IMG/VR virus record: IMGVR_UViG_3300010885_076238
Span: 140,312-204,311 of that record
Length of the DNA: 64,000 bases
Direction: 5' to 3' (one strand)
The position numbers were made by a program, and so were the translations under genes. Below, piece after piece: positions 1,251-25,778 of this stretch. The notes under the pieces are model-generated. The model saw nothing but the letters and a program-made list of their open reading frames with translations, was not told the origin of the DNA and made no database searches. Within the stretch, counting starts at the first letter, position 1, and every line of letters begins with the position of its first letter.

Positions 1251-1286
1251 TTTTAAATAAAAATAATTTCCATCCGTTATACTTCT

Positions 1287-1589
1287 ATGAACACAAGCAC
1301 CATAAAAGAATACGAGCAGGCATTGATTGAGTGGATCGACACCCTCACGCTCAATGGCAAGTCTGGCCGAAGGGCCGTGTTCGTTGAGAGAAGCCTCAAG
1401 CGAAGGTACAAATTGACGGTGCAGAAGGCCGTTAGAATGTCCCCCAGTCAAATTCCAACCAACTGGTTCAAGGGCTTAGATGAGTTCAAGCTGCTCACAC
1501 TGTGGCATCTGACAAACAATATCAGTCGAAAATTTAAGACTGAAATTCCAGAGCAGTTCAAATTCCGAAAACTTTTGGCGGAGCTGTAA
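1287..1589 (+). CDS. Hypothetical protein
   Basis: ORF directly after a CGTTAT promoter. Confidence 0.6.
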   Translation: MNTSTIKEYEQALIEWIDTLTLNGKSGRRAVFVERSLKRRYKLTVQKAVRMSPSQIPTNWFKGLDEFKLLTLWHLTNNISRKFKTEIPEQFKFRKLLAEL

Positions 1590-1656
1590 AAGTTTTCGGA
1601 ACAAACACCTGATGTTTATAGGCTACCAATAAATAAAAATTATTCTATTTCGTTAT

Positions 1657-2139
1657 ATGATTATGAGCGGCGTAGCAGATATTGAGTATGTGGAATTTGT
1701 CGGAGTTTTAGCCAAGGGAATAGGCAAGAAGCATAAGCGTGATATAGTTTTGTCTTGCGATCTTACGGGTCTGTTGAATCGCCAAGGAATAAGCGGCGGA
1801 AGCTGTTATCAAATTGTCACCAATGACAAAAAATTAATTCAAAAATCACGGGAAACTCTATCGGATTGTTGGATCGACAAAGACTTCAAGAAAAATTTAC
1901 GATCCAACATCAAGAACCACCTCCCAGAGAAACTTTATAATTATCTGGTAATGAGGAGCTTGGATGAAGAAGCCAATCTAAAAGATTTGCTAAATTATAG
2001 TGGTTGGGAAGTTTTAGAGTTGTTGCTGGAGACTGTTAGTCACGAAAGCGATTTCCGCAAATTCTTCGTCAAGATAAGCAAGGATAATTTAGAAATAATT
2101 CCTGCCGATGGTCAAGACAAAGTTAGCATTTCTTGGTAA
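1657..2139 (+). CDS. Hypothetical protein
   Basis: ORF after box + promoter. Confidence 0.6.
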   Translation: MIMSGVADIEYVEFVGVLAKGIGKKHKRDIVLSCDLTGLLNRQGISGGSCYQIVTNDKKLIQKSRETLSDCWIDKDFKKNLRSNIKNHLPEKLYNYLVMRSLDEEANLKDLLNYSGWEVLELLLETVSHESDFRKFFVKISKDNLEIIPADGQDKVSISW

Positions 2140-2141
2140 TT

Positions 2142-2429
2142 ATGCGATTATTAATTAGAAATCCCTACCGTATTAAAAATAATTTCAAGAACCTGTTTTG
2201 CAGGTATTGCCATATTTTTGGTCATAAATATTTTGAGTTCGAAATACTAAGGGATAATTATTATTTATTTGAAGCCGAAGCTAAGTGGACAACCAAACGA
2301 GATCATGCAGGAATTAAAATAATAATTGGAATTTTTGGTTATGCCATTGGAGCAACCATTTACGATAATCGACATTGGGACACTAAAAAAAATTGTTGGA
2401 TTGAATCGCCGCTGGTAAAACCAAAGTAG
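2142..2429 (+). CDS. Hypothetical protein
   Basis: ORF coupled to the upstream gene. Confidence 0.55.
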   Translation: MRLLIRNPYRIKNNFKNLFCRYCHIFGHKYFEFEILRDNYYLFEAEAKWTTKRDHAGIKIIIGIFGYAIGATIYDNRHWDTKKNCWIESPLVKPK

Positions 2430-2594
2430 ACTCGGCGGGCCATAAACCCCCTAATGCGTACCTGAGCAGATCGCCTTCGTGGTGGATGGTGATACAGGTG
2501 CATTACAAAAGCCGAAATGTACCTAGTTGTCTGGTAATCAGTAGGGCTAAACCCCGAATGCCAGTCCCAAAAGGACAAGGGACAACCGGCGATT
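2404..2594 (+). ncRNA. Unassigned multi-stem structured RNA candidate
   Basis: Closing stem aatcgccg/cggcgatt; internal stems tcggc/gccga, taatgc..acctg/caggt.gcatta, gttgtc/gacaac, gtcc/ggac. Confidence 0.55.
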
Positions 2595-2640
2595 TTTTCT
2601 CTTGAAAATTAAAAATTTAACGCTATAATAATCATGTGAC

Positions 2641-2713
2641 GGCCCCATCTTCTAGAGGCCTAGGAAAGCGGACTTTCACTCCGCTAACATGGGTTCGAAT
2701 CCCATTGGGGTCA
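2641..2713 (+). tRNA. tRNA-Glu(TTC)
   Basis: Cloverleaf; anticodon arm GCGGA-CTTTCAC-TCCGC; GGTTCGAATCC T-arm; TTGAAA-N16-TATAAT promoter at 2602-2629; no encoded CCA. Confidence 0.95.
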
Positions 2714-2725
2714 CTATAATTCATC

Positions 2726-2986
2726 ATGCTCAATCACGAAGGCAAAGTTTTCAATCCTTACTCTTTCAAAGAGCTTACTGGTTGGGAATTAGAGATTGTT
2801 GCTTTTTTAGATGATCAATATGATGCCAAAGCCAAGGATTATTTACTTGGAGACTTGAGTTGGGCAGATTACGTTCAGTCTAAAGAGCAAATCATATCGG
2901 ACTTTTTTACAAAAAGGTACGGTAAAATTTATCTCGACCGTCTGCCTGATAATTTGAAAAATAAAATATTGGCTTATTCGTTATGA
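2726..2986 (+). CDS. Hypothetical protein, ...NKILAYSL C-terminal family
   Basis: C-terminus shared with the next two genes. Confidence 0.65.
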   Translation: MLNHEGKVFNPYSFKELTGWELEIVAFLDDQYDAKAKDYLLGDLSWADYVQSKEQIISDFFTKRYGKIYLDRLPDNLKNKILAYSL

Positions 2987-2990
2987 AACT

Positions 2991-3200
2991 ATGAAATCCG
3001 ATATTGATCTTTTTTTGAAGCCAGTTTGTGAAGAATATAACAAAAACCAAAGTGAAATGTCATTAAAATTAATTTTGGATCTGGTCACTTGTTTGCCAAA
3101 CAAAAAAGAACCGATATTTGATCCAAAGTTTGTTTTTCAACTTATTCATAAAGAATTGCACGAAGAACTAAAAAATAAAATATTGGCTTATTCGTTATGA
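2991..3200 (+). CDS. Hypothetical protein, ...NKILAYSL family
   Basis: Same C-terminus. Confidence 0.6.
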   Translation: MKSDIDLFLKPVCEEYNKNQSEMSLKLILDLVTCLPNKKEPIFDPKFVFQLIHKELHEELKNKILAYSL

Positions 3201-3532
3201 AATATGAAACAAGTACGAACATTAGAGACTGGCTGCCTACTTGGCTTAAGTATGACAAAGTAGAAAATATAAAATTCTATAACGGAATTCCAGCAGTAGA
3301 ATTTGTGAATGAACTTCTTGATTGGGTAGATAATTCCAAGCTGGGCGATCTTAGAAAGAAAAAATACACACACTTCATCATATATCATGCAGTTCAAGCC
3401 CTAACCAGAGAAGTGAAAAATCTCCAGATAGCTTATAAAGAATTAGTTGATTACATTAATTGGCTAAGTAAGAAGCTTAAGAAACCTCTTCCCGAAAATG
3501 CTCGTAATCAAGTAATCGCATATAGCCTGTAG
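3197..3532 (+). CDS. Hypothetical protein, ...NQVIAYSL family
   Basis: Related C-terminus LPENARNQVIAYSL. Confidence 0.65.
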   Translation: MKYETSTNIRDWLPTWLKYDKVENIKFYNGIPAVEFVNELLDWVDNSKLGDLRKKKYTHFIIYHAVQALTREVKNLQIAYKELVDYINWLSKKLKKPLPENARNQVIAYSL

Positions 3533-3708
3533 TCATGTTATACTGTGTAACATGATTGAATTCATATTTTCTTGTTTTTGTATTATTATTTGCGGAATTT
3601 CTGGCTATTTAATTGGCGAATTTATTAAATTAAACACCTGATGTTTATCTGAGTCTGACCTGTCCGCTAATATACAAAAATAATAAAAAAGCCAATTCGT
3701 TATGAATT

Positions 3709-3969
3709 ATGGCAAATACTTCCGTTCTTGAAGAGTTGAAGAAGTTCATTCCCTACGCTGTGCAAAACAGTGTTAGAAGGAAAGAGCGCCAAGGATCTGA
3801 GCAGTGGATGAAAGAGTTTGACGAGCAATTAATTAATATGTATTTGACCGGAGTGAAGAAGCGTAAGAGCGATAAGGCTCTATGCGAATATGCCAAGTTG
3901 ATTGCTACTGCAAATGGCGTTGAACTTCCTGACAACATTAAATATTTTCTAATTTTATTGAACATATAA
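3709..3969 (+). CDS. Hypothetical protein
   Basis: ORF after promoter; LPDNIK C-terminal motif. Confidence 0.6.
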   Translation: MANTSVLEELKKFIPYAVQNSVRRKERQGSEQWMKEFDEQLINMYLTGVKKRKSDKALCEYAKLIATANGVELPDNIKYFLILLNI

Positions 3970-4002
3970 AATAAAAATTAGTGTCGTTCGTTATGACATT
4001 AT

Positions 4003-4075
4003 GGGGCGTTCGTCTAACGGTCAAAGACGCCAGTCTTATTAACTGGACATGGGTGTTCGATTCACTCACGCCCTA
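4003..4075 (+). tRNA. tRNA-Ile(TAT)-like with pyrimidine at position 37
   Basis: Acceptor GGGGCGT/ACGCCCT, D-stem GTCT/AGAC, anticodon arm CCAGT-CTTATTA-ACTGG, T-arm GGGTG-TTCGATT-CACTC. Confidence 0.8.
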
Positions 4076-4089
4076 CTAGGAGATTTACT

Positions 4090-4386: not shown

Positions 4387-4470
4387 ATTGCAAAAGGCTG
4401 GCTGGTTTTGTTGCAAAAGGCCGTATAAAATAAAAAGAAAATAATTTCGTTATGGTCTTAGAGGTGAAAT

Positions 4471-6189: not shown

Positions 6190-6625
6190 TAGTAGATAAA
6201 AAAGAACCAGAGCTAGATGCTAAGACGTTACGAGAATTAGACGAACAATATTCAAAAGAAAAATCAGATAGAAAGAATCTCCAAGAAACAATAAATTTCA
6301 TGAAGTCTCTTCTAGATGACGATGACGAATGAATGCCTTGCACAAATTTTAATTACTAAAGTCCAACTTAAGAATAATTTTTAATTTACTTAATTTGGGC
6401 GTTAGTAATTAATAATTTATATGACGAATACCTGATGTTTATTAACTGATTTTTCTTTTCGAAAATAAGTCAAGTTTACGCAAACCTTTGTGGCATAAGG
6501 ACTTACGACAAAAAACTTTAACTTATTCATCCTAAGTCCTTATGTGACAGTAGTTTACGTCAAATCAAAGATTGCAAAAATAAAAATATATATTGATCGT
6601 TATCTGGGAACAAGGAGAAAATTTT

Positions 6626-7012
6626 ATGGGCTTGGACATGTACGCTTACGCTGTTGACCCCAAGGAATGTGAGAATTTTGATGAATTCTCGTGCAAATTC
6701 AAAGGCGAATACAAGCCAGATGAAATTTATTACTGGCGCAAACATCATGATTTGCATGGATGGATGGAAAATCTGTACCGTAGCAAGGGCGGTCTTGAGG
6801 AGTTCAACTGCCAGAAGGTGATGCTGACTGTGGATGATTTGAATGAGCTTGAGAAGGCACTTATCTCTAAAGGATTGCCTAGCACCACAGGATTTTTCTT
6901 CGGAAATAATCCTCCTGATGAAGAAACTTTGAACGAAGACCTTCTTTTTGTTGCTAAGGCCAGAAAAGTAATAGAAGAAGGAAATGTTGTATACTACGAC
7001 AGTTGGTGGTAA
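6626..7012 (+). CDS. Conserved phage hypothetical protein (MGLDMY...WRK...YDSWW type)
   Basis: AAGGAG RBS before ATG 6626; familiar phage motif pattern. Confidence 0.75.
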   Translation: MGLDMYAYAVDPKECENFDEFSCKFKGEYKPDEIYYWRKHHDLHGWMENLYRSKGGLEEFNCQKVMLTVDDLNELEKALISKGLPSTTGFFFGNNPPDEETLNEDLLFVAKARKVIEEGNVVYYDSWW

Positions 7013-7043
7013 AATAATAAAAAATAAGGAGCGTTATAAGATT

Positions 7044-7625: not shown

Positions 7626-7834
7626 TGCGATATAACATTGACACTACGAATGGCGACCTTGTTCAAATCGACCTTGCTGGTGATTCTTGGATTGCCTCTG
7701 ACGACACTTCAATCCTTGTCACTTTGATAAAGTTCAACACTGACCCTTCTCAAAGTCTTTCTCTTTCCGTTACTAAGAAGGACTTGGAAAAAATAGTTTC
7801 TAATTTAAATATCATCCTGCCTAATAATAATTAA
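7622..7834 (+). CDS. Hypothetical protein
   Basis: ATGA overlap with the upstream gene. Confidence 0.55.
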   Translation: MMRYNIDTTNGDLVQIDLAGDSWIASDDTSILVTLIKFNTDPSQSLSLSVTKKDLEKIVSNLNIILPNNN

Positions 7835-7853
7835 TCTAAAGAGTTATGTAAAT

Positions 7854-8084: not shown

Positions 8085-8308
8085 TCTGCACAAATTCCAA
8101 GGAAACAAAATAAAATAAAAAATAATTTGTTTCCTCTACGGAATTAGGCTCCTATAATTAATATTTTATAGGGTCGAAACACCTGATGTTTATTTTTGGT
8201 GCAGCACTTTCTACTACTTATAGAGAGGCGGTCAAAAATAATTTTCCTCTTCGACCGTTATGCAGTATGGCAGCGATTGAGACTGCCAAGCTCAACTGGG
8301 AACATGAA

Positions 8309-8551: not shown

Positions 8552-8626
8552 GAAATAATTTTCGATCTAGTTCGTTATCCCAATGTGGCAGCGATTGAGA
8601 CTGCCGCAGCAACCGGAGCAAAAAAG

Positions 8627-8872: not shown

Positions 8873-8878
8873 GTCCTA

Positions 8879-8910: not shown

Positions 8911-8959
8911 GCTAGAAAATAATTTTCAATCCAGTTCGTTATACAAGTAGGAGAAAAAA

Positions 8960-9322
8960 ATGAGAATTACTGCTAAAGAAGCTGCTGATCGTTTGCGTGT
9001 GAGTTATGTAGTTGCTGCGGGCATCATGGCCCACCTAGAAGAGACAGGCGCAGCGAAGGTTGTGGAAAAGAAGTTCCATGCCAGCGGGAAGGGAAAGCCG
9101 ACTCGCGTGTATGAAGTTGAACAGCATACTGTGCTGAACTTCGGAGACGTTGCTGCTGCTGCCGCCGCACCCGTAGTCGAGCCAGTTGTAGTCGAGCCAG
9201 TTGTGTTCACGACTCCGGTTGTCGAGGCTCCGGCTGTTGTCGAGGTTGTCGAGGAGAAGATCGAAACGCTCGACCATGTAGCGGCTGCGTTGGCTCGACT
9301 CAAGGCCGACAACGCCGCGTGA
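8960..9322 (+). CDS. Small winged-HTH-like protein, paralog 2
   Basis: TAKEAADRLRVSY...GKGKPTRVYEV with a low-complexity V/E/P linker. Confidence 0.75.
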   Translation: MRITAKEAADRLRVSYVVAAGIMAHLEETGAAKVVEKKFHASGKGKPTRVYEVEQHTVLNFGDVAAAAAAPVVEPVVVEPVVFTTPVVEAPAVVEVVEEKIETLDHVAAALARLKADNAA

Positions 9323-9363
9323 AATAAAAATTGATTTATTTCGTTATCTGATTAGGAGAAACA

Positions 9364-9750: not shown

Positions 9751-9837
9751 AGGCGAACACCTAATGTCTATAAAGCGGTTGGCTAGATAGCATAAAATAA
9801 AAATTGATTTATTTCGTTATCTGATTAGGAGAAATTC

Positions 9838-10025: not shown

Positions 10026-10343
10026 ATGTCTATAAAAATGCAGTGGATTAGTTTTTTCGGCCCGCGCCGTCCAATCAACGGACAAAAGATTTTCTACTAC
10101 GGCGAGCATATCGGCGTTTGGAGTGGAACGTACAGCCTAGACTGGAATGATCCGGTTAGCCCCCATAGGATAATTTGTGGGGAAAAGCCAAGCAAGGAAA
10201 CCTCCGATGTATTGGCTGAGTACGGCTTGAACAATATCACCATGATTGTAGATCGAATGGATGCTCCTTGGTGGATGCCAGACGAGGGTCAGCCCAAGCC
10301 AGAAAAGCCAGATCAAAATTACCCGCCAGAATATCCAAAATAA
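10026..10343 (+). CDS. Hypothetical protein
   Basis: ORF overlapping the box at 10017. Confidence 0.6.
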   Translation: MSIKMQWISFFGPRRPINGQKIFYYGEHIGVWSGTYSLDWNDPVSPHRIICGEKPSKETSDVLAEYGLNNITMIVDRMDAPWWMPDEGQPKPEKPDQNYPPEYPK

Positions 10344-10380
10344 TTTTTAGTTCGGTTCGTTATACAAATAACAATACAAT

Positions 10381-10787: not shown

Positions 10788-10822
10788 TGAAAAATAATTT
10801 TCCTTTCTGTTCGTTATGTGAT

Positions 10823-11047: not shown

Positions 11048-11203
11048 ATGTCAAAGCAAGAAATGATCGAAATTGTGGATTCTCAGGTCAAGTACGGACT
11101 GCCCAGAGAGGAAGCAATCCGCCTACTAGCTTTCTTTATGGACGAAGATGATCCAGAGAACAACGCAGAGATTTGGTTTCAGCAAAAAATCGGCGGCGGT
11201 TGA
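11048..11203 (+). CDS. Small hypothetical protein
   Basis: AAGGAG RBS, MSKQEMIEIVDSQ... Confidence 0.55.
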   Translation: MSKQEMIEIVDSQVKYGLPREEAIRLLAFFMDEDDPENNAEIWFQQKIGGG

Positions 11204-11248
11204 AAATAATTTCTGCCCTAATTCGTTATAAAATCAAGGAGATCATCA

Positions 11249-11673: not shown

Positions 11674-11901
11674 ATGCAGGCGGACATAGCCACCTTGACC
11701 GTCAAGGCGAGGCAAAAGGCTCGCAAATGGGTCAAGGAAAGGCTGAAAATGCACCCCGGCAAGTTCGTGGTCAAACAAGGTGAGCAGTCTTGTCCTTGCT
11801 GGAACGGGGAAAACGCTATTCAGTTAGAGAACACGACCGACAGATGGAGCGGTTGGTTCCCCGTAACAGACATAGAAATCTCTAGCGACAATGAAAAATA
11901 A
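11674..11901 (+). CDS. Hypothetical protein
   Basis: GGAG RBS. Confidence 0.6.
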   Translation: MQADIATLTVKARQKARKWVKERLKMHPGKFVVKQGEQSCPCWNGENAIQLENTTDRWSGWFPVTDIEISSDNEK

Positions 11902-11927
11902 TTTTCACTTTTACTCGTTATCTATAT

Positions 11928-12158: not shown

Positions 12159-12284
12159 CTAATATACAAAATATTAATTAGCCAATAATTATTATTTTCA
12201 ACACCTGATGTTTATATGGAAACTAGACGGGGGCAATAAAATAATTTTCATTTCAAATCGTTATGTTCTTAGGAGGACAATGAA

Positions 12285-12906: not shown

Positions 12907-12984
12907 TCAGGGCAAAATTTTTTTCGGTTCGGATCGTTATACCAATACAGGCCATGTGGCCTACTAACAAGGAGAAAAAGAAAA

Positions 12985-13606: not shown

Positions 13607-13691
13607 GTAACACCTACCGTTTATTATTAATTAATAATAAACCTATAAAATAATTAGTTCGCTCAATCGTTATTTGGTATGGAGGAAGGAT

Positions 13692-13868: not shown

Positions 13869-13937
13869 ATTCCTAAAATAATTAGTTCGCTCAATCGTTA
13901 TTTGGTATAGGGAAGATTTACTAAAAGAGAGAGTCTT

Positions 13938-15139: not shown

Positions 15140-15328
15140 CCCGCACAAATTTAGACGGCAATATCTTATAAATATTCTGCCTCGCATTCGTTACGACTAA
15201 AAACATATAAAATAATAATTGTCATAAAAATAAAAATCACCTGATGTTTATATGGTCAGCAGAAGGATAAAAATAATTTTCGATCCAGTGCGTTATGGAA
15301 ATATAAGTTCCACAACCGGAGAAAAGGT

Positions 15329-15574
15329 ATGACAAAGAGAGAGCAGCAGACGGTAAAAAGGATGCTGGAAACGGGCCGCGTGATTGATTTCCGTGACGAA
15401 CGCCGACCGGGGGAAGTCGCGGAGGATGGCAACGGCTTGTGGGCATACCTCAAACCTGGCCTGAGATGCAGTCTGTCCGACACCCACATTTGCCACGAAT
15501 ATACGGTGGCTGACCTAGCTCGTGCCGTCAAGTGGGCTGAACCGTGCAATTGCAACGAGTGCAATATAAAATAA
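15329..15574 (+). CDS. Hypothetical Cys-containing protein
   Basis: Promoter + RBS. Confidence 0.6.
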   Translation: MTKREQQTVKRMLETGRVIDFRDERRPGEVAEDGNGLWAYLKPGLRCSLSDTHICHEYTVADLARAVKWAEPCNCNECNIK

Positions 15575-15612
15575 TTTTCGATCCAGTGCGTTATCCCAGC
15601 AGAGGAGACAAT

Positions 15613-15768: not shown

Positions 15769-15819
15769 GTAAAAAATAATTTTCGATCCATTTCGTTATA
15801 GAAAACAGGAGAAAAAATA

Positions 15820-16140: not shown

Positions 16141-16405
16141 GAAGCACAAAAATAAAAATAAAGTCTAGCCCAACCTGCCCAATACATATTCATACAGAAT
16201 GGCAGGTTGGGCTTAGGTGCTTAAACACCTAGTGTTTATTATAAGAATAAATAAAAAATTGGGGTTGGGCGCATTTCTATCGCTCTTATCGCTGTGACAA
16301 TTTGATAACGATTCTTTTCAAAAATAATTTTCCCAAAAATTATTTTCCCTTTCGACCGTTGTGCAGTATGGCCGCGATTGAGACGGCCAAGCCAAATCGG
16401 GAAAC

Positions 16406-16987: not shown

Positions 16988-17101
16988 CCGATCCGGCCCC
17001 TCCCCCTACTGGGGGAGGGGTTAGGGGATAAAGAATAATTTCCGATCCGGTTCGTTATCTAGTATGGCCGCGATTGAGACGGCCAAAAAAGGAGAGCGAT
17101 C

Positions 17102-17338: not shown

Positions 17339-17545
17339 AATCCCATTCATCAAACACCTGATGTTTATATAGCGGCGGACGAGCCGCGCCGAGCCTGGGC
17401 TGGGCGCATTTCTATCGCTCTTGTCCCTCTGACATTTTGATAACGAATTAGATGGAAAAAAATTTTGGCCAAAATTATTTTGGCTTTCGACCGTTATGCA
17501 GTATGGCCGCGATTGAGACGGCCAGCCTTAGTGGGAGATTGAATC

Positions 17546-18487: not shown

Positions 18488-18607
18488 TGCGAACGATGCC
18501 CCCTACCCGAAAGGGTAGGGGGGATTCATCGTAAAATTATTTTCGGTTTGATTCGTTATCTAGTATGGCCGCGATTGAGACGGCCAAGCCAATCGGGAGA
18601 CCTAATC

Positions 18608-18796: not shown

Positions 18797-18926
18797 CGGG
18801 GGGCAGCCGCCCAACTCAACACCTAATGTTTATTGGCAAAGGTGAGCAATAAAAAATAAATTCCCAGCTAATTCGTTATCTAGTATGGCCGCGACAGTGA
18901 CGGCCAAGCCAATCTAGGAAATAACG

Positions 18927-19528: not shown

Positions 19529-19763
19529 CGGGCTTTGGCCCAATGCTCTAACACCTAATGTTTATAATCAACAGTGAGTTGCTTGCCAAAACCAAAGGAG
19601 CCGGACATGGAAACTTTTGAGCAGTGGTGCAAGAGGATGCAAGAAGAACACGATCAATGGATTTCAAGTCCCGAAGGACAAATCTGGATCAAGGGCTAAA
19701 AATTATTTTCGGTTTGATTCGTTATCAAGTATGGCCGATCATTCAACACCTAAGGAACAAGTC

Positions 19764-20078: not shown

Positions 20079-20137
20079 AAAAGGGGGCTTGGGAAACCAA
20101 GTCCCCAATAATTAACACCAAATGTCTATTATAGAGT

Positions 20138-20422: not shown

Positions 20423-20496
20423 AAAATTTTTTTTACTTTCATTCGTTATACCAATATGGCAGCAATTGAGACTGCCGGATTACTAGGATTGCTCTA

Positions 20497-20726: not shown

Positions 20727-20858
20727 AACAATCGGCAGTAAACCTGCCACCCAACCCAAAAGGTTGGGCCATTAGCAAATACCTAATGTTTATTGTTGAA
20801 TCGAACCTGATAAAAATAATTTTCGATCTAGTTCGTTATAGATTTAGGAGGACGTTTT

Positions 20859-21071: not shown

Positions 21072-21234
21072 AAAAAACTGTCGGAGCAACCAAGGCTCAC
21101 GCATCATGCGGATATTGCAAACACTTGCGCAAGTTCGGAAAGCGACTTGCCAATAAGGCTTCTCGCAAACACGGAAATAATTTTCGATTCAATGCGTTAT
21201 CAAATATAGAGAATCCCAACCCCGGAGAATAATC

Positions 21235-21465
21235 ATGTTCAAGAAGAAAACCGATGGTCGATTCCGTGTCGAGCTGAAGTATAAGAACGGCAGCGAAGCA
21301 TTCATGGTCAGCAACGACTACCAGCAAATCTGCCGCCTGTACGAGCTTGCCAGAACTCCCATTTGCGAAAATTTCACACAGTCGATCTACGAAGTGATCT
21401 TGTTCGACGGCGATAAGCCCCTTGCAAACTGGACTAACTCAGCCGCATTAGTCAAAGTGGCTTGA
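21235..21465 (+). CDS. Hypothetical protein
   Basis: Promoter + GGAG. Confidence 0.6.
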   Translation: MFKKKTDGRFRVELKYKNGSEAFMVSNDYQQICRLYELARTPICENFTQSIYEVILFDGDKPLANWTNSAALVKVA

Positions 21466-21473
21466 CAATCCTA

Positions 21474-21550
21474 GGCGATTCTGGGTAGGGCCGGTCTCAT
21501 GAGCCGGATTGGGTAGCACCCCCCGCGTGGTTCGATTCCACGACTCGCCA
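21474..21550 (+). tRNA. Atypical D-arm-less tRNA-like RNA, anticodon CAT
   Basis: Acceptor GGCGATT/ACTCGCC-A, anticodon arm CCGGT-CTCATGA-GCCGG, T-arm CGTGG-TTCGATT-CCACG; only 10 nt in place of the D-arm. Confidence 0.65.
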
Positions 21551-21585
21551 TTTAGAATGCGGTAAAATGCAACAAGGAGCAAACC

Positions 21586-21825
21586 ATGAATACTGAATTT
21601 TATGTGGGCGAACACCGTGGTATCTGGGTAGGCCCAGTCATCCGAAATAAACAGACGAATCATCCTGTGGCATTCGTCGCAGCCGGATCAGAACACTTTT
21701 CCGAAATATTATCCCTAGCACCAGAAATGCTTGAAGCACTACGGAAAATCAGGAATAACTCAGACAACGCGGAAGTCAACAAAATCGCATCAGAAATCCT
21801 ACTCAAGGCAACCAAACACGCCTAA
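21586..21825 (+). CDS. Hypothetical protein (APEMLEAL motif)
   Basis: AAGGAG RBS; common phage motif. Confidence 0.65.
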   Translation: MNTEFYVGEHRGIWVGPVIRNKQTNHPVAFVAAGSEHFSEILSLAPEMLEALRKIRNNSDNAEVNKIASEILLKATKHA

Positions 21826-22011
21826 TCGTCAACACCTAATGTTTATTTCCCGAACGGGACAATTCAGACAAAAATCAGGCAATTTATAATAATTATTCCC
21901 GCTCGGGAAAGTTAGGTAATCTGTGCAAGCCCATAAAAGAAAATAAAAAATCCAAGGCCCGATTGACGATAGATAAGGTACGGGACAGAAAACCATTCAA
22001 AGGAGTGAATC

Positions 22012-22278
22012 ATGTTGGCTTGGATCGGAATCGCAATAACCGCCGTTGGAATGATTTTTAGTAGCTATGAGTTCGTGAAAAAAAATCCAGAACTCTTGCC
22101 CAAAGTTCAAAACGTACAACTGCTGGCCCATCGTCAACGTCAATCAGCGTTCATGTACAGTCAAGTAAATTTGGCCTATGATGTTGTGAACGGAAAACAT
22201 TGGTTTCAACACCCAGACGGTCAGTGGAGAGAATTCCCACCAAAACCCTCTCAAGTCGATATGCAAAACAGCCGATAA
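22012..22278 (+). CDS. Membrane-anchored hypothetical protein
   Basis: N-terminal hydrophobic helix; AAGGAG. Confidence 0.6.
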   Translation: MLAWIGIAITAVGMIFSSYEFVKKNPELLPKVQNVQLLAHRQRQSAFMYSQVNLAYDVVNGKHWFQHPDGQWREFPPKPSQVDMQNSR

Positions 22279-22902
22279 ATAAAATAAGGAAAGGAATCCA
22301 AAATGAAAAAAATCAACTGGAACCAAATCGTCAACGCTCTTATTCTTGTCAAAATAGGACAAGACTTAGGAACCAACTCGCAACTTACCCAATCCATCCA
22401 TCATATCATCGACGTTATTGCTACGTTCGCTAATGCCTTTGTAAGAATATAAAATAATTTCTCGATCAGTTCGTTATACAATAGTGGCCGTCCCATTCTC
22501 AGGAGAGCAAACATGAACACTGACACCAACTGGACTTACGAGCGCGAGGGAGCCAAAGAGATGATCGCAAGGCTCGAAGAAGAAATTCAGAATTCGACCT
22601 CCAAGCAGGATCGAATCAACAAACAGGAAGAAATACAAAGACTCCAATCGTAAAGAGTCAAAAAATAATTTTCAATCCCGTTCGTTATACAATAGTGGTC
22701 AACTAAAGGTGCTGACTGAAAGTGACACACGGCGGACAAGGTGGCCGACCGCAGGATCAGCACCACTCTAAAGGATCAAAAATGTATCTGACTCTCAATG
22801 ATTGGATGATGCTCGTTGGACTGATTTCTTTCGCAGGATTCTGTTCCTACACTGCCCACGAAATTCAAGGTGCAATCCACAACTACTTACATGGAGAATA
22901 TA

Positions 22903-23247
22903 ATGATTTTTGAAGTTGAAATGCTCGCGTTCGGAAAACCAGGAGAAGTTCGCAAGGTCAATGTTCCCGATGAGGCTCTAACTCGCGCAAAAGAAGATAC
23001 AGACAATATTCTTGAAGCCGCGTTTTATTACGGCCAAAACGATTTCCAGCCGCAAAACCACCCGTCAGTAAGTGCTGGCGATGTGATCCGCTGGAAAGAA
23101 GAAAACTATCTGGTTGCTGGTATGGGTTTCAAAAAGCTGACCGATGAACAACTAAATGATTATCGATCTCTCGACCAAAACGATAAGTTCATCGGAAGAT
23201 GCCAAATTGAAATAGGCGAACCAGTAGTAGGACGCAGAAACAAGTAA
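22903..23247 (+). CDS. YodL-like protein
   Basis: PSVSAGDVI...YLVAGMGFKKL resembles the YodL signature. Confidence 0.6.
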   Translation: MIFEVEMLAFGKPGEVRKVNVPDEALTRAKEDTDNILEAAFYYGQNDFQPQNHPSVSAGDVIRWKEENYLVAGMGFKKLTDEQLNDYRSLDQNDKFIGRCQIEIGEPVVGRRNK

Positions 23248-23442
23248 CCTGCACAATTCCATCAAACCATCAAAGCCCTAATAAATAATAAATATCGCTT
23301 ACGAAAGTGATATTTATAGGGCTTTATCTAACACCTAATGTTTATAAAACATCGCTAGTCGAAAAAAATAATTTTCGATCCAGTGCGTTATGCCAATGTG
23401 GGCAGCAATTGAGACTGCCCCCGTTTTCAGGAGGTTTGAATC

Positions 23443-23652
23443 ATGGGTGACGAAGATTCCTTTCTCGATTCGCGTTGGGAAGAAATTTGCGAGTATGAAG
23501 ACTCGTACGAGCAAGAGGATTGCTTCGATGACTTCGACGATGAAGATGATGAATACGATTGCTTCAGCGAAGACGACAACGACGACTTTGAAGACGACTT
23601 CGCTGACGACAACTACGACGACTACGACGACTTCTACGAGGAAGCCGCGTGA
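23443..23652 (+). CDS. Extremely acidic small protein (DNA-mimic candidate)
   Basis: More than half D/E with spaced F/Y; promoter, leader hairpin, AGGAGG. Confidence 0.7.
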   Translation: MGDEDSFLDSRWEEICEYEDSYEQEDCFDDFDDEDDEYDCFSEDDNDDFEDDFADDNYDDYDDFYEEAA

Positions 23653-23797
23653 AAATAGGGGGCTTGGGAAACCAAGCTTCCCCCAACTATCAACACCTAA
23701 TGTTTATAATGCCAACCCGCCGGAAACTTCTCGAAGAAAAATAATTTTCCATTCAAATCGTTATAAATCATCGGCCCAAAACCCTGAGGATCAAATC

Positions 23798-24343
23798 ATG
23801 AGCTACGAAAACGCCCCCGCCACCATCATGCTCGCGACCCACTGCTGCTGCTGCGGTCGCCCACTGGTCGATGCTATCTCTGTTGAGATGGGTATCGGCC
23901 CCGATTGCCGTCAAGGTCGCACCGATGGCATTTCCAAAGAACAGCAAGAAATCTGCAACAAACTCACCCATGCCGCCGCTCTTGCCGCGCAGGAAGGTCA
24001 AGTCGAGAAGGTTCGCGCGATTGCCGCCGAAATTGCCGCTCTAGGTCTGACTGAATTGGCCGATAAGGTTCAGCACCGTTTCGTCAACGCTGAAAGATTG
24101 GCAAAGATCAATATCATTCAGACCGGCGACCGTCTGACCGTTACAACCCCGTGGAAACGTAGCAGCGACTTTGTTGCCGCATGGAGAACCATTCCCGGCA
24201 GACGATATGGCGGGGCCGGTAAGAACATCATCCCCCTTAGCAGCAAGGGTGAGTTGTGGAATCTGCTACAGAAGTTCTTCCCCGGCCAATTCGGCAAGGG
24301 GCCAAAGGGACTGTTCAGAGTCCCTAAGAACGAGGCGGCTTGA
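23798..24343 (+). CDS. DUF6011-like Zn-ribbon protein
   Basis: CCCCGRPLVD..S...GIGPDC; start re-assigned after the promoter at 23737. Confidence 0.75.
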   Translation: MSYENAPATIMLATHCCCCGRPLVDAISVEMGIGPDCRQGRTDGISKEQQEICNKLTHAAALAAQEGQVEKVRAIAAEIAALGLTELADKVQHRFVNAERLAKINIIQTGDRLTVTTPWKRSSDFVAAWRTIPGRRYGGAGKNIIPLSSKGELWNLLQKFFPGQFGKGPKGLFRVPKNEAA

Positions 24344-24567
24344 CTGCCTGCACAAATTATATGCCCCCGAAATCCAAATGGAGAGTAGGGGTCGCGTTAT
24401 ACAGAAAAAACTTTAGAAATAAATATTAATACCTAATGTTTATTTTTATTCGCGCCGGTAGCCGGTAGCCGGTCGAGTTCGCCGGTAGTAAAAAAATAAT
24501 TTCCGATCCGGTTCGTTATACCAATATGGCCGCGATTGAGACGGCCAGCCAATCGGGAGGATGGGAC

Positions 24568-24858
24568 ATGGCGACTTGGATCAACGGCGACCCGGTGAAT
24601 GTTGTTGCAGGCATGATCAGGAGCCGCTGGTTGCTTCTGCCCGCAACTTGGTTTGAATCAGGCATGGGCGTCAAAGTGGACGACGAACGCAAATTCGTCC
24701 ATGTGATCGACCGACGCGGAAAGCCCGTGGGCAATCCCATAAAGTTTTGGGATGATGCTCCGGCCGGTGGCGGATCAAAAGAAGATGCCATCAACGAGTG
24801 CAAAGCATTCGGAGAGACATACGCACAAATTTTCCGCCCCCGAAATCCACAAGGATAG
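24568..24858 (+). CDS. Hypothetical cassette protein
   Basis: Promoter, leader hairpin, GGAGG. Confidence 0.6.
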   Translation: MATWINGDPVNVVAGMIRSRWLLLPATWFESGMGVKVDDERKFVHVIDRRGKPVGNPIKFWDDAPAGGGSKEDAINECKAFGETYAQIFRPRNPQG

Positions 24859-25014
24859 TAGGGGTCGCGTTATACAGAAACGGCAGAAAATATTTGGCCT
24901 GCCACTTAACACCTAACGTTTATTTTTGATGGTGGGCAGCAAAAAATAATTTTCGGTTTGGTGCGTTATCTAGTATGGCCGCAATTGAGACGGCCAGCCA
25001 ATCGGGAGCTTGTC

Positions 25015-25209
25015 ATGATCGCCATCGTCATCGTCACCGCCGCGTACGTCGCTTTCGGCATCGCGGGGTACTCGTACGTCAACCGTTGGATTTGCCACGG
25101 CCTTGACGACGGCAATGAGTCTGGAACTGGCCTGTCGTGCTTGCACATTCTCAACCCCATCATGGTGGCGGTTGGAGCGAGAATAATGCTCGACAAGCTG
25201 TCCTCCTAG
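25015..25209 (+). CDS. Small membrane protein, copy 2
   Basis: Paralog of 18608 in a duplicated cassette. Confidence 0.7.
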   Translation: MIAIVIVTAAYVAFGIAGYSYVNRWICHGLDDGNESGTGLSCLHILNPIMVAVGARIMLDKLSS

Positions 25210-25343
25210 CGGAGGGCAGCCGCCCAACCAAACACCTAATGTTTATAAGTGAGCGAACGCGCGGCTCCCGAATAATTTTCAATTTCATTCGTTATCCAGT
25301 ATCGCCGCACTTGTGACGGCAGGCCGACCATAGGAACCAACCC

Positions 25344-25649
25344 ATGACCACCACTCGCGAAACGCTTCTGGCCGAGTTTGCCTCCGTCTACAGCCGCACA
25401 GGCTGGAGGGTCGCCGCTTCTCTCGACGGCATGACCGTGGATCAGTTGCAGACCACGCTCGACGGTCTGTACGAAGCCATCAGTGAGGAAAGGGAAAAGA
25501 TGGACGCTTGGTTCGCAAGACAGAACGAGGATGCTGAAATGTCTGCCCGTGAGTGGGAGCAGTTGCAGGCAAAAGCCGATGCTGAGGCTGCTGCCGAAGC
25601 TGAGTGGTCGAAGTGGCAACACCACTACGACAGGCTGGTAGGGGTGTGA
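25344..25649 (+). CDS. Hypothetical acidic helical protein
   Basis: Promoter, variant leader hairpin, AGGA. Confidence 0.65.
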   Translation: MTTTRETLLAEFASVYSRTGWRVAASLDGMTVDQLQTTLDGLYEAISEEREKMDAWFARQNEDAEMSAREWEQLQAKADAEAAAEAEWSKWQHHYDRLVGV

Positions 25650-25778
25650 CCCGCCTCATATCGAAACACCTAATGTTTATAATGGGCCTGAGTTAGCCGA
25701 AAATAATCCGCCCACCCAACCGTTATCAGTGTAGCGACCGCATATGTGACGGTCTCGCCTACCCTTGGAGTTCCTGCC

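What the first reader, a model, noticed from the sequence alone, without database searches (positions are those of the whole stretch)
1261..25726. About 40 copies of an ECF-sigma-like promoter, roughly one per gene
Seen: AAAAT-N~16-CGTTAT with an A/T-tract spacer precedes nearly every early ORF, a tRNA (4003) and ncRNAs, whereas canonical sigma70 promoters are rare (1074, 2602). Established: ECF sigma promoters typically have an AAC-like -35 and a CGT-like -10. Inference: early transcription uses a dedicated ECF-like sigma (phage-encoded, possibly virion-delivered, or a hijacked host one).
Basis: partly seen in the sequence, partly recalled or inferred. Interest (0 to 1): 0.6.

Follow-up and report, generated by a model that had tools for sequence, protein, structure and literature searches.

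The report
Phage-private promoter repeated ~93 times
A freshwater jumbo phage carries about 93 copies of its own two-block promoter, roughly one per small gene, most likely read by a sigma factor the phage itself encodes; this is a new example of a known phage strategy, not a new kind of system.

Summary
AAAAT-N16-CGTTAT occurs 38 times in the window (0.62 expected). A weight matrix finds 45 copies on the + strand and 2 on the - strand in window 669-25726. The whole 204-kb phage record has 93 on + and 4 on -, all strong ones between 54.9 and 166.0 kb.

Copies are intergenic and co-oriented with the genes. In about 22 cases the gene's ATG starts exactly 5-6 nt after CGTTAT, so the mRNA would be leaderless and start about 7 nt after the hexamer. 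That is the geometry of a bacterial -10 element.

Outside the window (58185-59198) the phage encodes a very divergent sigma-70-family protein. Its predicted fold matches full-length sigmas (regions 1.2-2-3-4), not two-domain ECF sigmas. Its gene carries the same promoter.

Related phages keep the architecture but use different hexamers (CGTATA, GGTTGT, TATGGTAAG-type). Each sigma ortholog sits behind its own lineage's type.

The motif's geometry equals that of sigma-28/FliA promoters. It has the ECF-like CGT but lacks the ECF AAC. No RNA data exist, so start sites and the sigma-promoter pairing remain inferred.

Verdict: a new member of a known kind (phage sigma plus private promoters), unusually dense.

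The parts
669..695 (+). promoter copy (GAAATAAA..CGTTAT); SD-led ORF 741-1010
   Evidence: PWM 18.4 bits
1254..1280 (+). promoter copy; leaderless ORF 1287-1589 (ATG 6 nt after hexamer)
   Evidence: PWM 20.7
1630..1656 (+). promoter copy; leaderless ORF 1663-2139
   Evidence: PWM 26.0
2316..2342 (+). variant copy (GGTTAT) inside ORF 2133-2429; target unclear
   Evidence: PWM 22.9
2958..2984 (+). promoter copy; leaderless ORF 2991-3200; 27-mer identical to the copy at 3172
   Evidence: PWM 26.8
3172..3198 (+). promoter copy; start codon of its target uncertain (ORF 3197-3532)
   Evidence: PWM 26.2
3677..3703 (+). promoter copy; leaderless ORF 3709-3969
   Evidence: PWM 30.6
3968..3994 (+). promoter copy driving tRNA-Ile(tat) 4003-4076; predicted start 2 nt before the mature 5' end
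   Evidence: PWM 34.7; tRNA
4427..4453 (+). promoter copy; SD-led SNF2-family helicase 4471-6189
   Evidence: PWM 23.8; Pfam SNF2-rel_dom 2.8e-32
6577..6603 (+). promoter copy; SD-led ORF 6626-7012
   Evidence: PWM 23.3
7011..7037 (+). promoter copy; leaderless ORF 7044-7625
   Evidence: PWM 29.6
7821..7847 (+). weak variant copy (AGTTAT); leaderless ORF 7854-8084
   Evidence: PWM 13.0, close to the null maximum of 13.9
8235..8261 (+). promoter copy followed by the 5' hairpin (GGCAG/CTGCC form); ORF to 8551
   Evidence: PWM 32.7; hairpin
8552..8578 (+). promoter copy plus 5' hairpin; ORF 8585-8872
   Evidence: PWM 33.7; hairpin
8916..8942 (+). promoter copy; SD at predicted +1; ORF 8960-9322
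   Evidence: PWM 40.5, the best copy
9321..9347 (+). promoter copy; SD at +1; ORF 9364-9750
   Evidence: PWM 28.7
9794..9820 (+). promoter copy; SD at +1; ORF 9838-10014
   Evidence: PWM 35.3
10337..10363 (+). promoter copy with no ORF behind it; drives the non-coding stretch 10364-10790
   Evidence: PWM 33.1; fold z -4.4 and no Rfam match; the leading 30-40 nt printed after this promoter recur in L034
10364..10790 (+). candidate structured non-coding RNA (about 420 nt)
   Evidence: MFE -158.5 vs -129.3 +/- 6.6 in shuffles; Rfam E<=1: none
10791..10817 (+). promoter copy; about 125 nt non-coding stretch ending in a closing helix and T-run, then ORF 11048-11203
   Evidence: PWM 32.2; fold z -1.6, weak
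11203..11229 (+). promoter copy; SD at +1; ORF 11249-11473
   Evidence: PWM 30.9
11895..11921 (+). promoter copy; leaderless ORF 11928-12158
   Evidence: PWM 32.2
12238..12264 (+). promoter copy; SD at +1; ORF 12285-12467
   Evidence: PWM 34.4
12914..12940 (+). promoter copy; ORF 12985-13341
   Evidence: PWM 29.7
13647..13673 (+). promoter copy; ORF 13692-13868; identical to the copy at 13875
   Evidence: PWM 28.3; related strains lack 13643-13873
13875..13901 (+). promoter copy; ORF 13938-14177
   Evidence: PWM 27.3
15270..15296 (+). promoter copy; ORF 15329-15574
   Evidence: PWM 35.8
15568..15594 (+). promoter copy; ORF 15614-15769
   Evidence: PWM 37.2
15773..15799 (+). promoter copy; ORF 15820-16140
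   Evidence: PWM 32.5
16305..16331 (-). minus-strand copy, back to back with 16336; about 190 nt non-coding transcript ending in a terminator-like hairpin
   Evidence: PWM 24.2; about 80 nt downstream conserved with the 17466 copy
16336..16362 (+). promoter copy (CGTTGT) plus 5' hairpin; ORF 16406-16987
   Evidence: PWM 26.7; hairpin
17032..17058 (+). promoter copy plus 5' hairpin; ORF 17102-17338
   Evidence: PWM 31.4
17440..17466 (-). minus-strand copy, back to back with 17471; non-coding transcript
   Evidence: PWM 24.8; alignment A2
17471..17497 (+). promoter copy plus 5' hairpin; DUF932 protein 17546-18487
   Evidence: PWM 29.1; Pfam DUF932 1.7e-50
18533..18559 (+). promoter copy plus 5' hairpin; SD-led start near 18608
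   Evidence: PWM 33.7
18853..18879 (+). promoter copy plus 5' hairpin; ORF 18927-19268
   Evidence: PWM 31.4
19699..19725 (+). promoter copy; ORF from 19731 (leaderless) or 19764 (SD-led, in frame)
   Evidence: PWM 32.7
20423..20449 (+). promoter copy plus 5' hairpin; target start uncertain
   Evidence: PWM 31.2
20813..20839 (+). promoter copy; SD at +1; ORF 20859-21071
   Evidence: PWM 39.2
21174..21200 (+). promoter copy; ORF 21235-21465
   Evidence: PWM 28.1
22451..22477 (+). promoter copy; ORF 22513-22653
   Evidence: PWM 35.0
22662..22688 (+). promoter copy; long leader; target uncertain
   Evidence: PWM 37.5
23365..23391 (+). promoter copy plus 5' hairpin; DUF6011 protein ending at 24343
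   Evidence: PWM 40.1; Pfam DUF6011 1.3e-10
23738..23764 (+). promoter copy inside the 23390-24343 frame; in-frame SD-led ATG at 23798 (possible internal start)
   Evidence: PWM 30.9
24493..24519 (+). promoter copy plus 5' hairpin; ORF to 24858
   Evidence: PWM 39.7
24943..24969 (+). promoter copy plus 5' hairpin; small ORF
   Evidence: PWM 35.9
25269..25295 (+). promoter copy with degenerate hairpin; ORF 25344-25649
   Evidence: PWM 22.7
25700..25726 (+). last copy of the family; hairpin with compensatory A-U pair; ORF 25779-26207
   Evidence: PWM 19.4; hairpin pair counts

Best explanation
The repeats are promoters private to this phage. An A-rich block (AAAATAAT, about -33 to -26) and the hexamer CGTTAT (about -12 to -7), always 13 nt apart, are read by host core RNA polymerase carrying a phage-encoded sigma-70-family factor. 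That factor's gene lies at G000 58185-59198 (337 aa), 82 kb upstream of the window. Transcription starts about 7 nt after CGTTAT. The start is the A of the ATG (leaderless mRNA, about 22 genes), the first base of a Shine-Dalgarno sequence (about 27 genes, ATG 16-25 nt after the hexamer), or a conserved 5' stem-loop (about 12-14 genes in the G+C-rich part). Three tRNA genes and several non-coding stretches are served too. The sigma gene has its own copy of the promoter. It also lies 3.7 kb downstream of a perfect sigma-70 promoter, so host polymerase could make the first sigma, which would then amplify itself and switch on about 93 units covering 111 kb of + strand genes. Shown: the over-representation, strand and position rules, the sigma-like fold, and the comparative pattern. 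Inferred: the start sites, the pairing of this sigma with this motif, and the timing.
For: (1) Excess: 38 copies vs 0.62 expected. Genome-wide, 93 copies on + and 4 on - reach 12 bits or more, with null maxima mostly 8-10 bits (one 13.9).
(2) Position: 67 of 93 copies have a + strand ORF ending within -60..+30 of the motif (random 23 +/- 4.5). Only 5 of 93 lie deep in long ORFs (random 51 +/- 5). In 17 cases the TAA inside AAAATAAT is the upstream gene's stop.
(3) Start geometry: ATG lies at offset 5 or 6 after the hexamer in 37 of 93 copies, and at almost no neighbouring offset. A second peak of start codons lies at 17-20.
(4) A sigma is on board. Pfam Sigma70_r2 scores 24.9 bits on the genome and 23.2 on the protein (cut-off 24), and 18 of 25 homologs match it at E<=0.1. 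A profile of the family hits PDB sigma-H at 1.2e-4, plus SigE and SigF. An AlphaFold model (pLDDT 77) has only sigma chains among its top Foldseek hits. VIA gives Z about 12, with model residues 1-225 on sigma-S 64-220 and some alignments spanning residues 1-336.
(5) No beta or beta' RNA-polymerase domains and no second sigma were found in the record; the T7-type search was uninformative. No second private motif was found upstream of the motif-free genes, only TATAAT-like words.
(6) Comparative: relatives keep the A-rich block, N13 spacer, hexamer, + strand bias and one-per-gene layout, but use lineage-specific hexamers that exclude one another. These are CGTTAT (ours, L034, L041), GGTTGT/GGTTAT (L013), CGTATA (L035, L036, L038-40) and AGTAGTTTAYGGTA (L037, L022-26). 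Every sigma ortholog gene is directly preceded by its own lineage's type.
(7) Two huge phages with 21-24% identical sigma relatives each have their own two-block, N16, strand-biased motif: 25+2 and 14+0 copies, with 0 in controls.
Against: There is no transcript data. No RNA run holds this phage, so no start site is mapped.
The sigma's family scores are at or below curated cut-offs: Pfam 23.2 vs 24, TIGR02937 22 vs 42.9, FliA_WhiG 21 vs 189.6.
A sigma gene sitting behind the motif is also what a cascade would show, in which another factor reads the motif and this sigma serves later genes.
Covariation of hexamer type with sigma lineage is expected for any phage-encoded specificity factor, because relatives share both by descent.
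For L035-L037 the sigma gene and the promoter arrays were not seen on the same fetched stretch.
The record is only 88% complete and its tape-measure gene is cut at the end.
The binding test against the RNA polymerase clamp helices could not be run.
Confidence: 0.65

Rival explanations
1. The motif is a promoter, but it is read by another phage-encoded factor: an unrecognised sigma, a sigma-appropriating pair like T4 MotA/AsiA, or an unrecognised polymerase. That factor could lie in the missing 12% of the genome. The sigma at 58185 would then be a regulon member that directs a later class, as in the SPO1 gp28 to gp33/34 cascade.
For: The sigma gene lies behind a copy of the motif (19.4 bits), which fits a cascade as well as autoregulation. 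The record is incomplete. Many large ORFs have no family, for example 92050-94536 and 96149-98446. A free-standing RNA polymerase alpha-CTD homolog is conserved next to ClpX, so the phage does tinker with host polymerase in other ways.
Against: No other sigma and no beta/beta' RNA-polymerase domain was detected; the T7-type search was uninformative. No second private motif exists upstream of the motif-free genes for this sigma to read. The second sigma of relative L013 is absent here although the promoter family is present. The fixed two-block geometry with a 16-nt gap is what sigma regions 4 and 2 read.
Confidence: 0.17
2. The motif is read by a host alternative sigma that the phage exploits. 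The host factor would be sigma-28/FliA-like, given the identical geometry and the TAAA/CG-TA- resemblance, or an ECF sigma, given the CGT.
For: The distance from the first base of the -35 block to the CG of the -10 is 21 nt, as in TAAAGTTT-n11-GCCGATAA (PMC2859248). AAA, CG, T and A match. Relatives use CGTATA, which from memory is the hexamer of the B. subtilis sigma-W type.
Against: Close relatives (helicase 78-87% identical) use mutually exclusive hexamers: 0 CGTATA and 13 CGTTAT in L034, against 17 CGTATA and 0 CGTTAT in L035. Host sigma specificities are strongly conserved, so a phage-borne determinant fits better. The -11 A that sigma-28 flips out (PMC12784957) is a T here. The ECF AAC is missing. 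Making half the genome depend on a scarce, tightly regulated host sigma would be risky. The phage carries its own sigma.
Confidence: 0.1
3. The repeats are not primarily promoters. They would be recombination or cassette-boundary repeats, or RNA processing or termination signals, that happen to sit between genes.
For: Related strains lack exactly the unit between two identical copies (13643-13873). Several copies are identical over 27 nt or more. Spacers are conserved in the G+C-rich part.
Against: Two conserved blocks with a variable spacer of fixed length, strict co-orientation with genes, ATG or SD at fixed distances downstream, placement before tRNA genes, and no excess of terminator-like sites (21 vs 21.3). 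Recombination between copies is a natural by-product of repeated promoters.
Confidence: 0.04

Closest known systems
Phage-encoded sigma factors with private promoters: Salmonella phage 7-11 gp47 (GTAAtg-N16-aCTA) and phiEco32 gp36 (tAATGTAtA) (PMC8948821)
   Same: A phage sigma redirects host core polymerase to a phage-only consensus. In 7-11 the promoter is bipartite with a 16-nt gap, and starts lie 6-9 nt from the promoter element. Related phages with diverged sigmas have diverged promoters at equivalent genome positions.
   Different: Those phages have 6-8 such promoters, serving middle/late (phiEco32) or late (7-11) genes (structural genes are the late class in phiEco32). Here there are about 93, up to 1.9 per kb, serving small non-structural genes, tRNAs and non-coding RNAs, and none in the structural modules. 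The sigma here has no detectable sequence relative among GenBank phages.
Sigma-28 / FliA / SigD / WhiG (group 3) promoters, TAAAGTTT-n11-GCCGATAA (PMC2859248; structure PMC12784957)
   Same: Identical geometry: an 8-nt A/T-rich -35 block beginning (T/A)AAA, then 13 nt to CG-TA-. One copy is CGATAT. The sigma's model has a sigma-3-like domain, and FliA_WhiG is among the few NCBIfam models it touches.
   Different: The third hexamer base is T, not the flipped-out A of sigma-28. There is no GC extended -10. FliA_WhiG scores 21 bits against a cut-off of 189.6. The N-terminal helices align with region 1.2, which group 3 sigmas lack according to PMC12784957.
ECF (group 4) sigma promoters, e.g. sigma-W TGAAAC-N16-CGTATA and sigma-E GGAACTT-N16-GTCTAA (from memory)
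   Same: CGT at the start of the -10, a 16-nt gap, and an autoregulated sigma gene. The sister lineage uses exactly CGTATA. Distant relatives of this sigma family sit among TTCCGAAC-N16-GGTCTT and TGAAC-N16-TCTCT repeats.
   Different: No AAC in the -35 block here. The sigma is 337 aa with sigma-3-like and region-1.2-like parts. No anti-sigma gene was recognised beside it.
Sigma cascades of Bacillus phage SPO1 (gp28, gp33/34) and T4 (gp55) (from memory)
   Same: Host sigma-70 promoters start the programme and a phage sigma takes over for the next class.
   Different: Only one phage sigma was found here. The structural genes show TATAAT-like words rather than a second private motif.
Promoter-plus-stem-loop cassettes (PeSLs) of T4-type phages that shuffle small early genes (from memory; Arbiol et al. 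2010)
   Same: Arrays of small genes, each with its own promoter and a nearby conserved stem-loop. Cassette-sized gains and losses between strains, one of them bounded by identical promoter copies.
   Different: Here the stem-loop lies downstream of the start, inside the 5' leader, and the promoter is not the host sigma-70 type.

Membership tests
Bacterial-type (sigma-dependent) promoter | Two conserved blocks at a fixed distance of about 16-17 nt | tested here: met
   All 36 exact copies in the region have N16 between AAAAT and CGTTAT. The spacer is variable in the low-G+C part of the genome.
Bacterial-type (sigma-dependent) promoter | Upstream of and co-oriented with genes, outside coding sequence | tested here: met
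   93 on + vs 4 on -. 67 of 93 lie just after an ORF end (random 23). 5 of 93 lie deep in ORFs (random 51).
Bacterial-type (sigma-dependent) promoter | Transcription starts about 7 nt after the -10 hexamer | not testable with these tools
   No RNA run holds the phage. Indirect support: ATG at offset 5-6 in 37 of 93 copies, and the same in the CGTATA lineage.
Sigma-70 family protein (candidate factor, G000 58185-59198) | Region 2 recognised by sequence profile | tested here: inconclusive
   Pfam Sigma70_r2 scores 24.9 bits in the six-frame search and 23.2 on the protein (cut-off 24). 18 of 25 homologs match it at E<=0.1 (best 6e-06). A PDB profile search hits sigma-H at E 1.2e-4.
Sigma-70 family protein (candidate factor, G000 58185-59198) | Sigma fold (sigma-2, sigma-3, sigma-4 helical domains) | tested here: met
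   AlphaFold model pLDDT 77. The top 50 Foldseek hits are almost all sigma chains from RNA-polymerase complexes or sigma fragments. VIA Z reaches 12.2, with residues 1-225 on sigma-S 64-220 and some alignments spanning 1-336. Caveat: helical folds reach Z near 13 by chance in the tool's own notes.
Sigma-70 family protein (candidate factor, G000 58185-59198) | Binds core RNA polymerase (beta' clamp helices) | not tested
ECF (group 4) sigma / promoter system | AAC motif in the -35 element | tested here: not met
   The -35 block is AAAAT(A/T)(A/T)T and no C is conserved there.
ECF (group 4) sigma / promoter system | CGT-type -10 element | tested here: met
   CGTTAT here (invariant by construction in the 61 exact + strand copies). 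The PWM set also includes CGTTGT, GGTTAT, AGTTAT, CGATAT and CGCTAT.
ECF (group 4) sigma / promoter system | Sigma made of sigma-2 and sigma-4 only (about 170-220 aa) | tested here: not met
   The protein is 337 aa. The model has about 110 N-terminal residues aligning with region 1.2 and a three-helix domain (176-220) aligning with sigma-3.
ECF (group 4) sigma / promoter system | Sigma gene autoregulated and paired with an anti-sigma gene | tested here: inconclusive
   An own-type promoter precedes the sigma gene in about ten loci spanning at least six hexamer types. The neighbours are a conserved AAA ATPase downstream and a conserved 231-aa protein on the other strand upstream. Neither is recognisable as an anti-sigma.
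Sigma-28 / FliA class | Promoter TAAA-N15-GCCGATAA with A at -11 | tested here: not met
   The geometry is identical and 6 of 14 specified positions match, but T replaces the key A and there is no GC extension (PMC2859248; PMC12784957).
Sigma-28 / FliA class | Protein scores as FliA/WhiG | tested here: not met
   TIGR02479 scores 21-24.6 bits against a cut-off of 189.6.
Single-subunit (T7-like) or multisubunit phage RNA polymerase promoter | The phage encodes such a polymerase | tested here: inconclusive
   There is no match to PF00940, PF00562 or PF00623. However, the PF00940 control rang nowhere, jumbo-phage polymerases are very divergent, and 12% of the genome is missing.

The most novel reading that the evidence does not exclude
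This clade of uncultured freshwater jumbo phages holds a natural series of orthogonal sigma/promoter pairs. One divergent sigma family would keep its -35 reading (A-rich block, matching the highly conserved C-terminal domain) while its -10 specificity has switched repeatedly (CGTTAT, GGTTGT, CGTATA, TATGGTAAG-type, GACGG-type). Each pair would drive on the order of a hundred single-gene units, many of them leaderless. A free alpha-CTD homolog and a sigma-linked AAA ATPase may take part in remodelling the host polymerase.
Probability: 0.4. Interest if true: 0.6.

Novelty: new member of a known kind. Interest (0 to 1): 0.45.

Why it matters
Phage sigma factors with private promoters are textbook biology, so the principle is not new. 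Three things are of use here.

First, this is a clean, very large regulon: about 93 sites, with a further 10-23 per roughly 14-22-kb stretch fetched from each relative. It belongs to a sigma family that has no characterised member and no relative among sequenced cultured phages.

Second, sister lineages have exchanged the -10 hexamer while keeping the rest. That makes the recognition code of region 2 directly testable and offers ready-made orthogonal expression parts.

Third, the fixed spacing between hexamer and ATG predicts widespread leaderless translation in a phage whose other genes use strong Shine-Dalgarno sites. This says something about its unknown host.

For annotation, the motif gives gene starts, small genes and non-coding RNAs that ORF callers miss.

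Tried and rejected
Similarity searches
- GenBank phages by DNA: only a tRNA-like piece matched. By sigma protein: no match.
- An exact sub-motif scan of IMG/VR gave seven single hits, consistent with chance, and no other contig with repeated copies.
- A sigma-family scan of IMG/VR found only two very distant relatives.

Other polymerases or sigmas in the genome
- Pfam domains for T7-like polymerase and for beta and beta' were absent, but the T7 control was uninformative.
- Sigma70_r4_2 found nothing. Sigma70_r4 gave one weak hit in a 241-aa helix-turn-helix/zinc-finger-like protein that is not a sigma.
- The second sigma of relative L013 is absent here by tblastn.
- Two large unassigned ORFs (G000 92050-94536 and 96149-98446) were checked as possible polymerases. 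There were no PDB matches and only sub-threshold atlas hits.

Local signals
- Rfam found nothing at the non-coding stretches.
- Intrinsic terminators are not enriched between units (21 vs 21.3).

Comparative analysis
- The dyad search in L013 and L018 failed because too few copies lie near the sigma gene. The sigma-gene promoters were then aligned by eye and by pattern.

Expression and strain data
- No RNA run holds the phage.
- Contigs of four runs from an independent study were laid on 6,000 bases. They showed strain differences, but the substitution list was cut. In the complete part (8201-9519), 0 of 39 changes fall in the 56 core promoter positions (about 1.7 expected), which is not significant.

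Not run
There is no verdict.

Rejected readings
- The TATGG after many copies is not a conserved N-terminal peptide. The ATG is in frame with the SD-led start in some copies and out of frame in others, so it is read as part of an RNA hairpin.
- The record cannot be treated as circular. The tape-measure frame does not continue sensibly across the ends and there is no terminal repeat.

Full report
WHAT IS THERE

The pattern AAAAT-N(14-18)-CGTTAT matches 38 times in the window, against 0.62 expected. Thirty-six matches lie at 2958-25726, and every one of them has a 16-nt gap. CGTTAT alone is 2.6-fold over-represented.

Aligning the copies gives this consensus: AAAATAAT, then 13 nt, then CGTTAT, with a T preferred just before the C. 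About 5 variable bases follow, then TA(T/G)G. A weight matrix built from the exact copies finds 45 + strand and 2 - strand copies in window 669-25726. Shuffled genomes rarely exceed 10 bits, with one value of 13.9.

THE WINDOW IN ITS GENOME

The window is the last 64 kb of a 204,311-bp IMG/VR virus record rated 88% complete. It comes from freshwater metagenomes. The phage carries tRNAs, a tmRNA and a tape-measure gene of more than 2,353 codons that is cut by the record's end.

There are 93 copies on + and 4 on - at 12 bits or more. The strong ones all lie between 54.9 and 166.0 kb. Density rises from 0.35 per kb to 1.88 per kb towards the window. There are none in 0-54.9 kb or 166.1-204.3 kb, where the recognisable tail genes lie.

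WHY THESE ARE PROMOTERS

Position. Sixty-seven of 93 copies begin within -60..+30 nt of the end of a + strand ORF (random 23 +/- 4.5). Only 5 lie deep inside long ORFs (random 51 +/- 5). In 17 cases the TAA within AAAATAAT is itself the upstream stop codon.

Downstream spacing. ATG lies 5 or 6 nt after the hexamer in 37 of 93 copies and almost never at neighbouring offsets. A second peak of start codons lies at 17-20 nt, with AGGAG beginning where the first peak has its ATG. If the last T of CGTTAT is at about -7, then position +1 takes one of three forms:
- the A of the ATG (about 22 leaderless genes once doubtful cases are removed);
- the first base of the Shine-Dalgarno sequence (27 genes);
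- the first base of a conserved stem-loop (12-14 genes).

tRNA genes. tRNA-Ile (4003) starts 9 nt after a hexamer. tRNA-Lys and tRNA-Arg further upstream in the genome are also preceded by copies.

Other signals. Canonical sigma-70 sites are at chance level overall, but a few perfect ones exist: window 1074, and G000 54476 and 134994. So the host's main sigma presumably reads the ordinary consensus, and this motif is a different class.

THE CANDIDATE FACTOR

A six-frame Pfam search of the genome finds one Sigma70_r2 match, at G000 58185-59198. The protein has 24 metagenomic relatives on contigs up to 487 kb and none in GenBank phages.

Sequence evidence is borderline. Pfam scores 23.2 against a cut-off of 24, TIGR02937 scores 22 against 42.9, and FliA_WhiG scores 21 against 189.6. 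A family profile hits solved sigma-H, SigE and SigF.

Structure evidence is clearer. The AlphaFold model (pLDDT 77) retrieves essentially only sigma chains (from RNA-polymerase complexes or sigma fragments). Residues 1-225 align with regions 1.2 to 3 of sigma-S and sigma-A. Some alignments span residues 1-336, reaching sigma-70 region 4. It is therefore a sigma-70-family protein of the long architecture, not a two-domain ECF sigma.

No other sigma and no beta/beta' RNA-polymerase domain was found; the T7-type search was uninformative. No second private motif was found upstream of the motif-free genes, only TATAAT-like words.

The sigma gene has a copy of the motif 30 nt upstream (TAAATTTT-N13-CGTTAT). 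It also lies 3.7 kb downstream of a perfect sigma-70 promoter. Canonical sigma-70 promoters lie upstream of the sigma gene in two relatives as well: in L013 at the syntenic 81-aa gene 3.2 kb upstream, and in L015 at a 73-aa gene about 4.8 kb upstream.

COMPARATIVE EVIDENCE

I fetched relatives through homologs of the sigma and of the SNF2 helicase at window 4471. All keep the layout of A-rich block, N13 spacer, hexamer, + strand only and one per small gene. The hexamer is lineage-specific:

| Hexamer type | Loci | Relation to this phage |
|---|---|---|
| CGTTAT | ours; L034 (23 copies in 13.9 kb); L041 | helicase 87% (L034); sigma 54% (L041) |
| GGTTGT / GGTTAT | L013 | sigma 57% |
| CGTATA | L035 (17 copies); L036 (10-16 copies); L038-L040 | helicase 78% (L035, L036); sigma 43-49% (L038-L040) |
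| AGTAGTTTAYGGTA | L037 (8 copies); L022-L026 | helicase 65% (L037); sigma 28% (L022-L026) |
| AGTTGT | L018 | sigma 37% |
| GACGG-type | L019, L020 | sigma 33% |

CGTTAT and CGTATA, tested reciprocally, exclude each other between lineages. Every sigma ortholog gene is preceded by its own lineage's type. ATG 5-6 nt after the hexamer recurs in the CGTATA lineage.

Two huge phages with 21-24% identical relatives of this sigma have their own N16 two-block motifs. TTCCGAAC-N16-GGTCTT occurs 25+2 times, and TGAACYAA-N13-TCTCTWGG occurs 14+0 times. Reversed-pattern controls give 0.

Close relatives differ in the hexamer, so the specificity determinant is most simply phage-borne.

WHAT IT RESEMBLES

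But the AAC of ECF -35 elements is missing and the sigma is not group 4.

The geometry is exactly that of sigma-28 promoters: TAAAGTTT-n11-GCCGATAA (PMC2859248), with GCCGATAA at -15 to -8 (PMC12784957). In both, 21 nt separate the first base of the -35 block from the CG. However, the A that sigma-28 flips out is a T here.

Functionally, the nearest described systems are the phage sigmas of 7-11 (GTAAtg-N16-aCTA, eight promoters) and phiEco32 (six promoters). There, too, diverged sigmas go with diverged promoters at equivalent positions (PMC8948821). The differences here are scale (about 93 copies), targets (small non-structural genes, tRNAs, non-coding RNAs) and the leaderless class.

RIVALS

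- Another phage factor reads the motif and this sigma serves later genes: 0.17.
- A hijacked host sigma-28-like or ECF sigma: 0.10. This is disfavoured by the hexamer switches among close relatives.
- Repeats that are not promoters: 0.04.

WHAT COULD NOT BE DONE

No start sites could be mapped, because no RNA runs hold the phage. The sigma gene and the promoter arrays were not seen in one contig for L035-L037.

SIDE OBSERVATIONS

These are listed separately in the report: the 5' hairpin with compensatory changes, structured non-coding transcripts, the G+C-rich island, cassette indels between strains, and the free alpha-CTD homolog.

Noticed in passing
window 8262-8300, 8579-8617, 16363-16401, 17059-17097, 17498-17536, 18560-18598, 18880-18918, 20450-20488, 23392-23430, 24520-24558, 24970-25008, 25296-25334, 25727-25765: Thirteen transcripts of the G+C-rich part would begin with the same stem-loop (TATGGCCG-CGATTGAGA-CGGCCA), followed by a GGGAG-type ribosome site. 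96% of cells are paired, and two pairs show compensatory changes (GGCAG/CTGCC; A-U for G-C). The loop is conserved. The changes are also synonymous in the frame that starts at the ATG, but that frame is not kept in all copies. Likely a 5' stabiliser or a protein-binding site.
   Followed up: yes
window 10364-10790 and 10824-10950: Two promoter copies are followed by non-coding stretches. The first (about 420 nt) folds far better than shuffles (z -4.4). The second ends in a closing helix plus T-run (z only -1.6). Neither has an Rfam match. The first 30-40 nt printed after each promoter (sequence starts only) recur behind promoter copies in relative L034.
   Followed up: partly
window 16305-16331 and 17440-17466 (- strand): The only two strong minus-strand copies sit back to back with + strand copies. 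About 80 nt of the sequence downstream of them is conserved between the two. The first ends in a strong hairpin with a T-run about 190 nt on. These are candidate small RNAs.
   Followed up: partly
window about 8000-26000 (G000 about 125-166 kb): G+C is 0.44-0.54 here, against 0.30-0.34 in the rest of the phage. The island ends within a few hundred bases of the last promoter copy. The motif spans both compositions, and relatives L034-L036 (G+C 0.41-0.43) carry matching elements of the same region (the SNF2 helicase, hairpin-type leaders, and the starts of the non-coding stretches in L034), so it is not an assembly chimera. The cause is unknown.
   Followed up: partly
window 11657-11895, 13643-13873, 13425-13515, 9752-9790: Contigs from an independent study lack these stretches. 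One is a single promoter-less gene lying between a stop codon and the next promoter. One is exactly the unit between two identical promoter copies, as expected from recombination between promoter repeats.
   Followed up: partly
G000 49435-49710 (outside the window; L004:9435-9710): A free-standing 92-aa homolog of the C-terminal domain of RNA polymerase alpha (Pfam RNA_pol_A_CTD 27.1 bits, cut-off 23.8; aligns with rpoA residues about 249-311). It lies near ClpX and an AAA ATPase and is conserved in at least four relatives. Its role in transcription takeover is unknown.
   Followed up: partly
G000 59205-60329 and 57351-58046 (outside the window): The sigma gene is followed, often with overlapping stop and start, by an AAA ATPase, and preceded on the other strand by a 231-aa protein of unknown family. 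Both neighbours are conserved in every relative examined. They are possible partners or regulators of the sigma.
   Followed up: no
window 1074-1101 and 2602-2629: Canonical sigma-70-type promoters lie inside the motif region. The first is a perfect TTGACA-N16-TATAAT. The second has one mismatch and ends 12 nt before tRNA-Glu (2641). Other perfect ones lie at G000 54476 and 134994.
   Followed up: yes
window 23738-23764: A strong promoter copy lies inside the 317-codon frame 23390-24343 (DUF6011). It is followed by an in-frame SD-led ATG at 23798. This could be an internal start giving a shorter protein, or the long frame could be two genes.
   Followed up: no
window 43110-46752 (- strand): A tRNA cluster (Tyr, Trp, Ser, Pro, Ala, Gln, Gly, Thr) and a tmRNA (44551-44902, tag GTNSYAMAA). 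Rfam also reports a 136-nt tRNA match at 43909-44044 that ARAGORN does not call, possibly an interrupted tRNA. A tRNA nucleotidyltransferase gene lies at 51710-53035.
   Followed up: no
window 56942-64000: An open frame of at least 2,353 codons with several tape-measure families. It runs off the end of the record and does not continue at the record's start, so the genome is incomplete at this point.
   Followed up: yes
L013:19856-20728: Relative L013 encodes a second, more conventional sigma (290 aa, RpoD/SigK-like, TIGR02937 45.6 bits) that this phage lacks by tblastn. Related phages therefore differ in their number of sigmas.
   Followed up: partly
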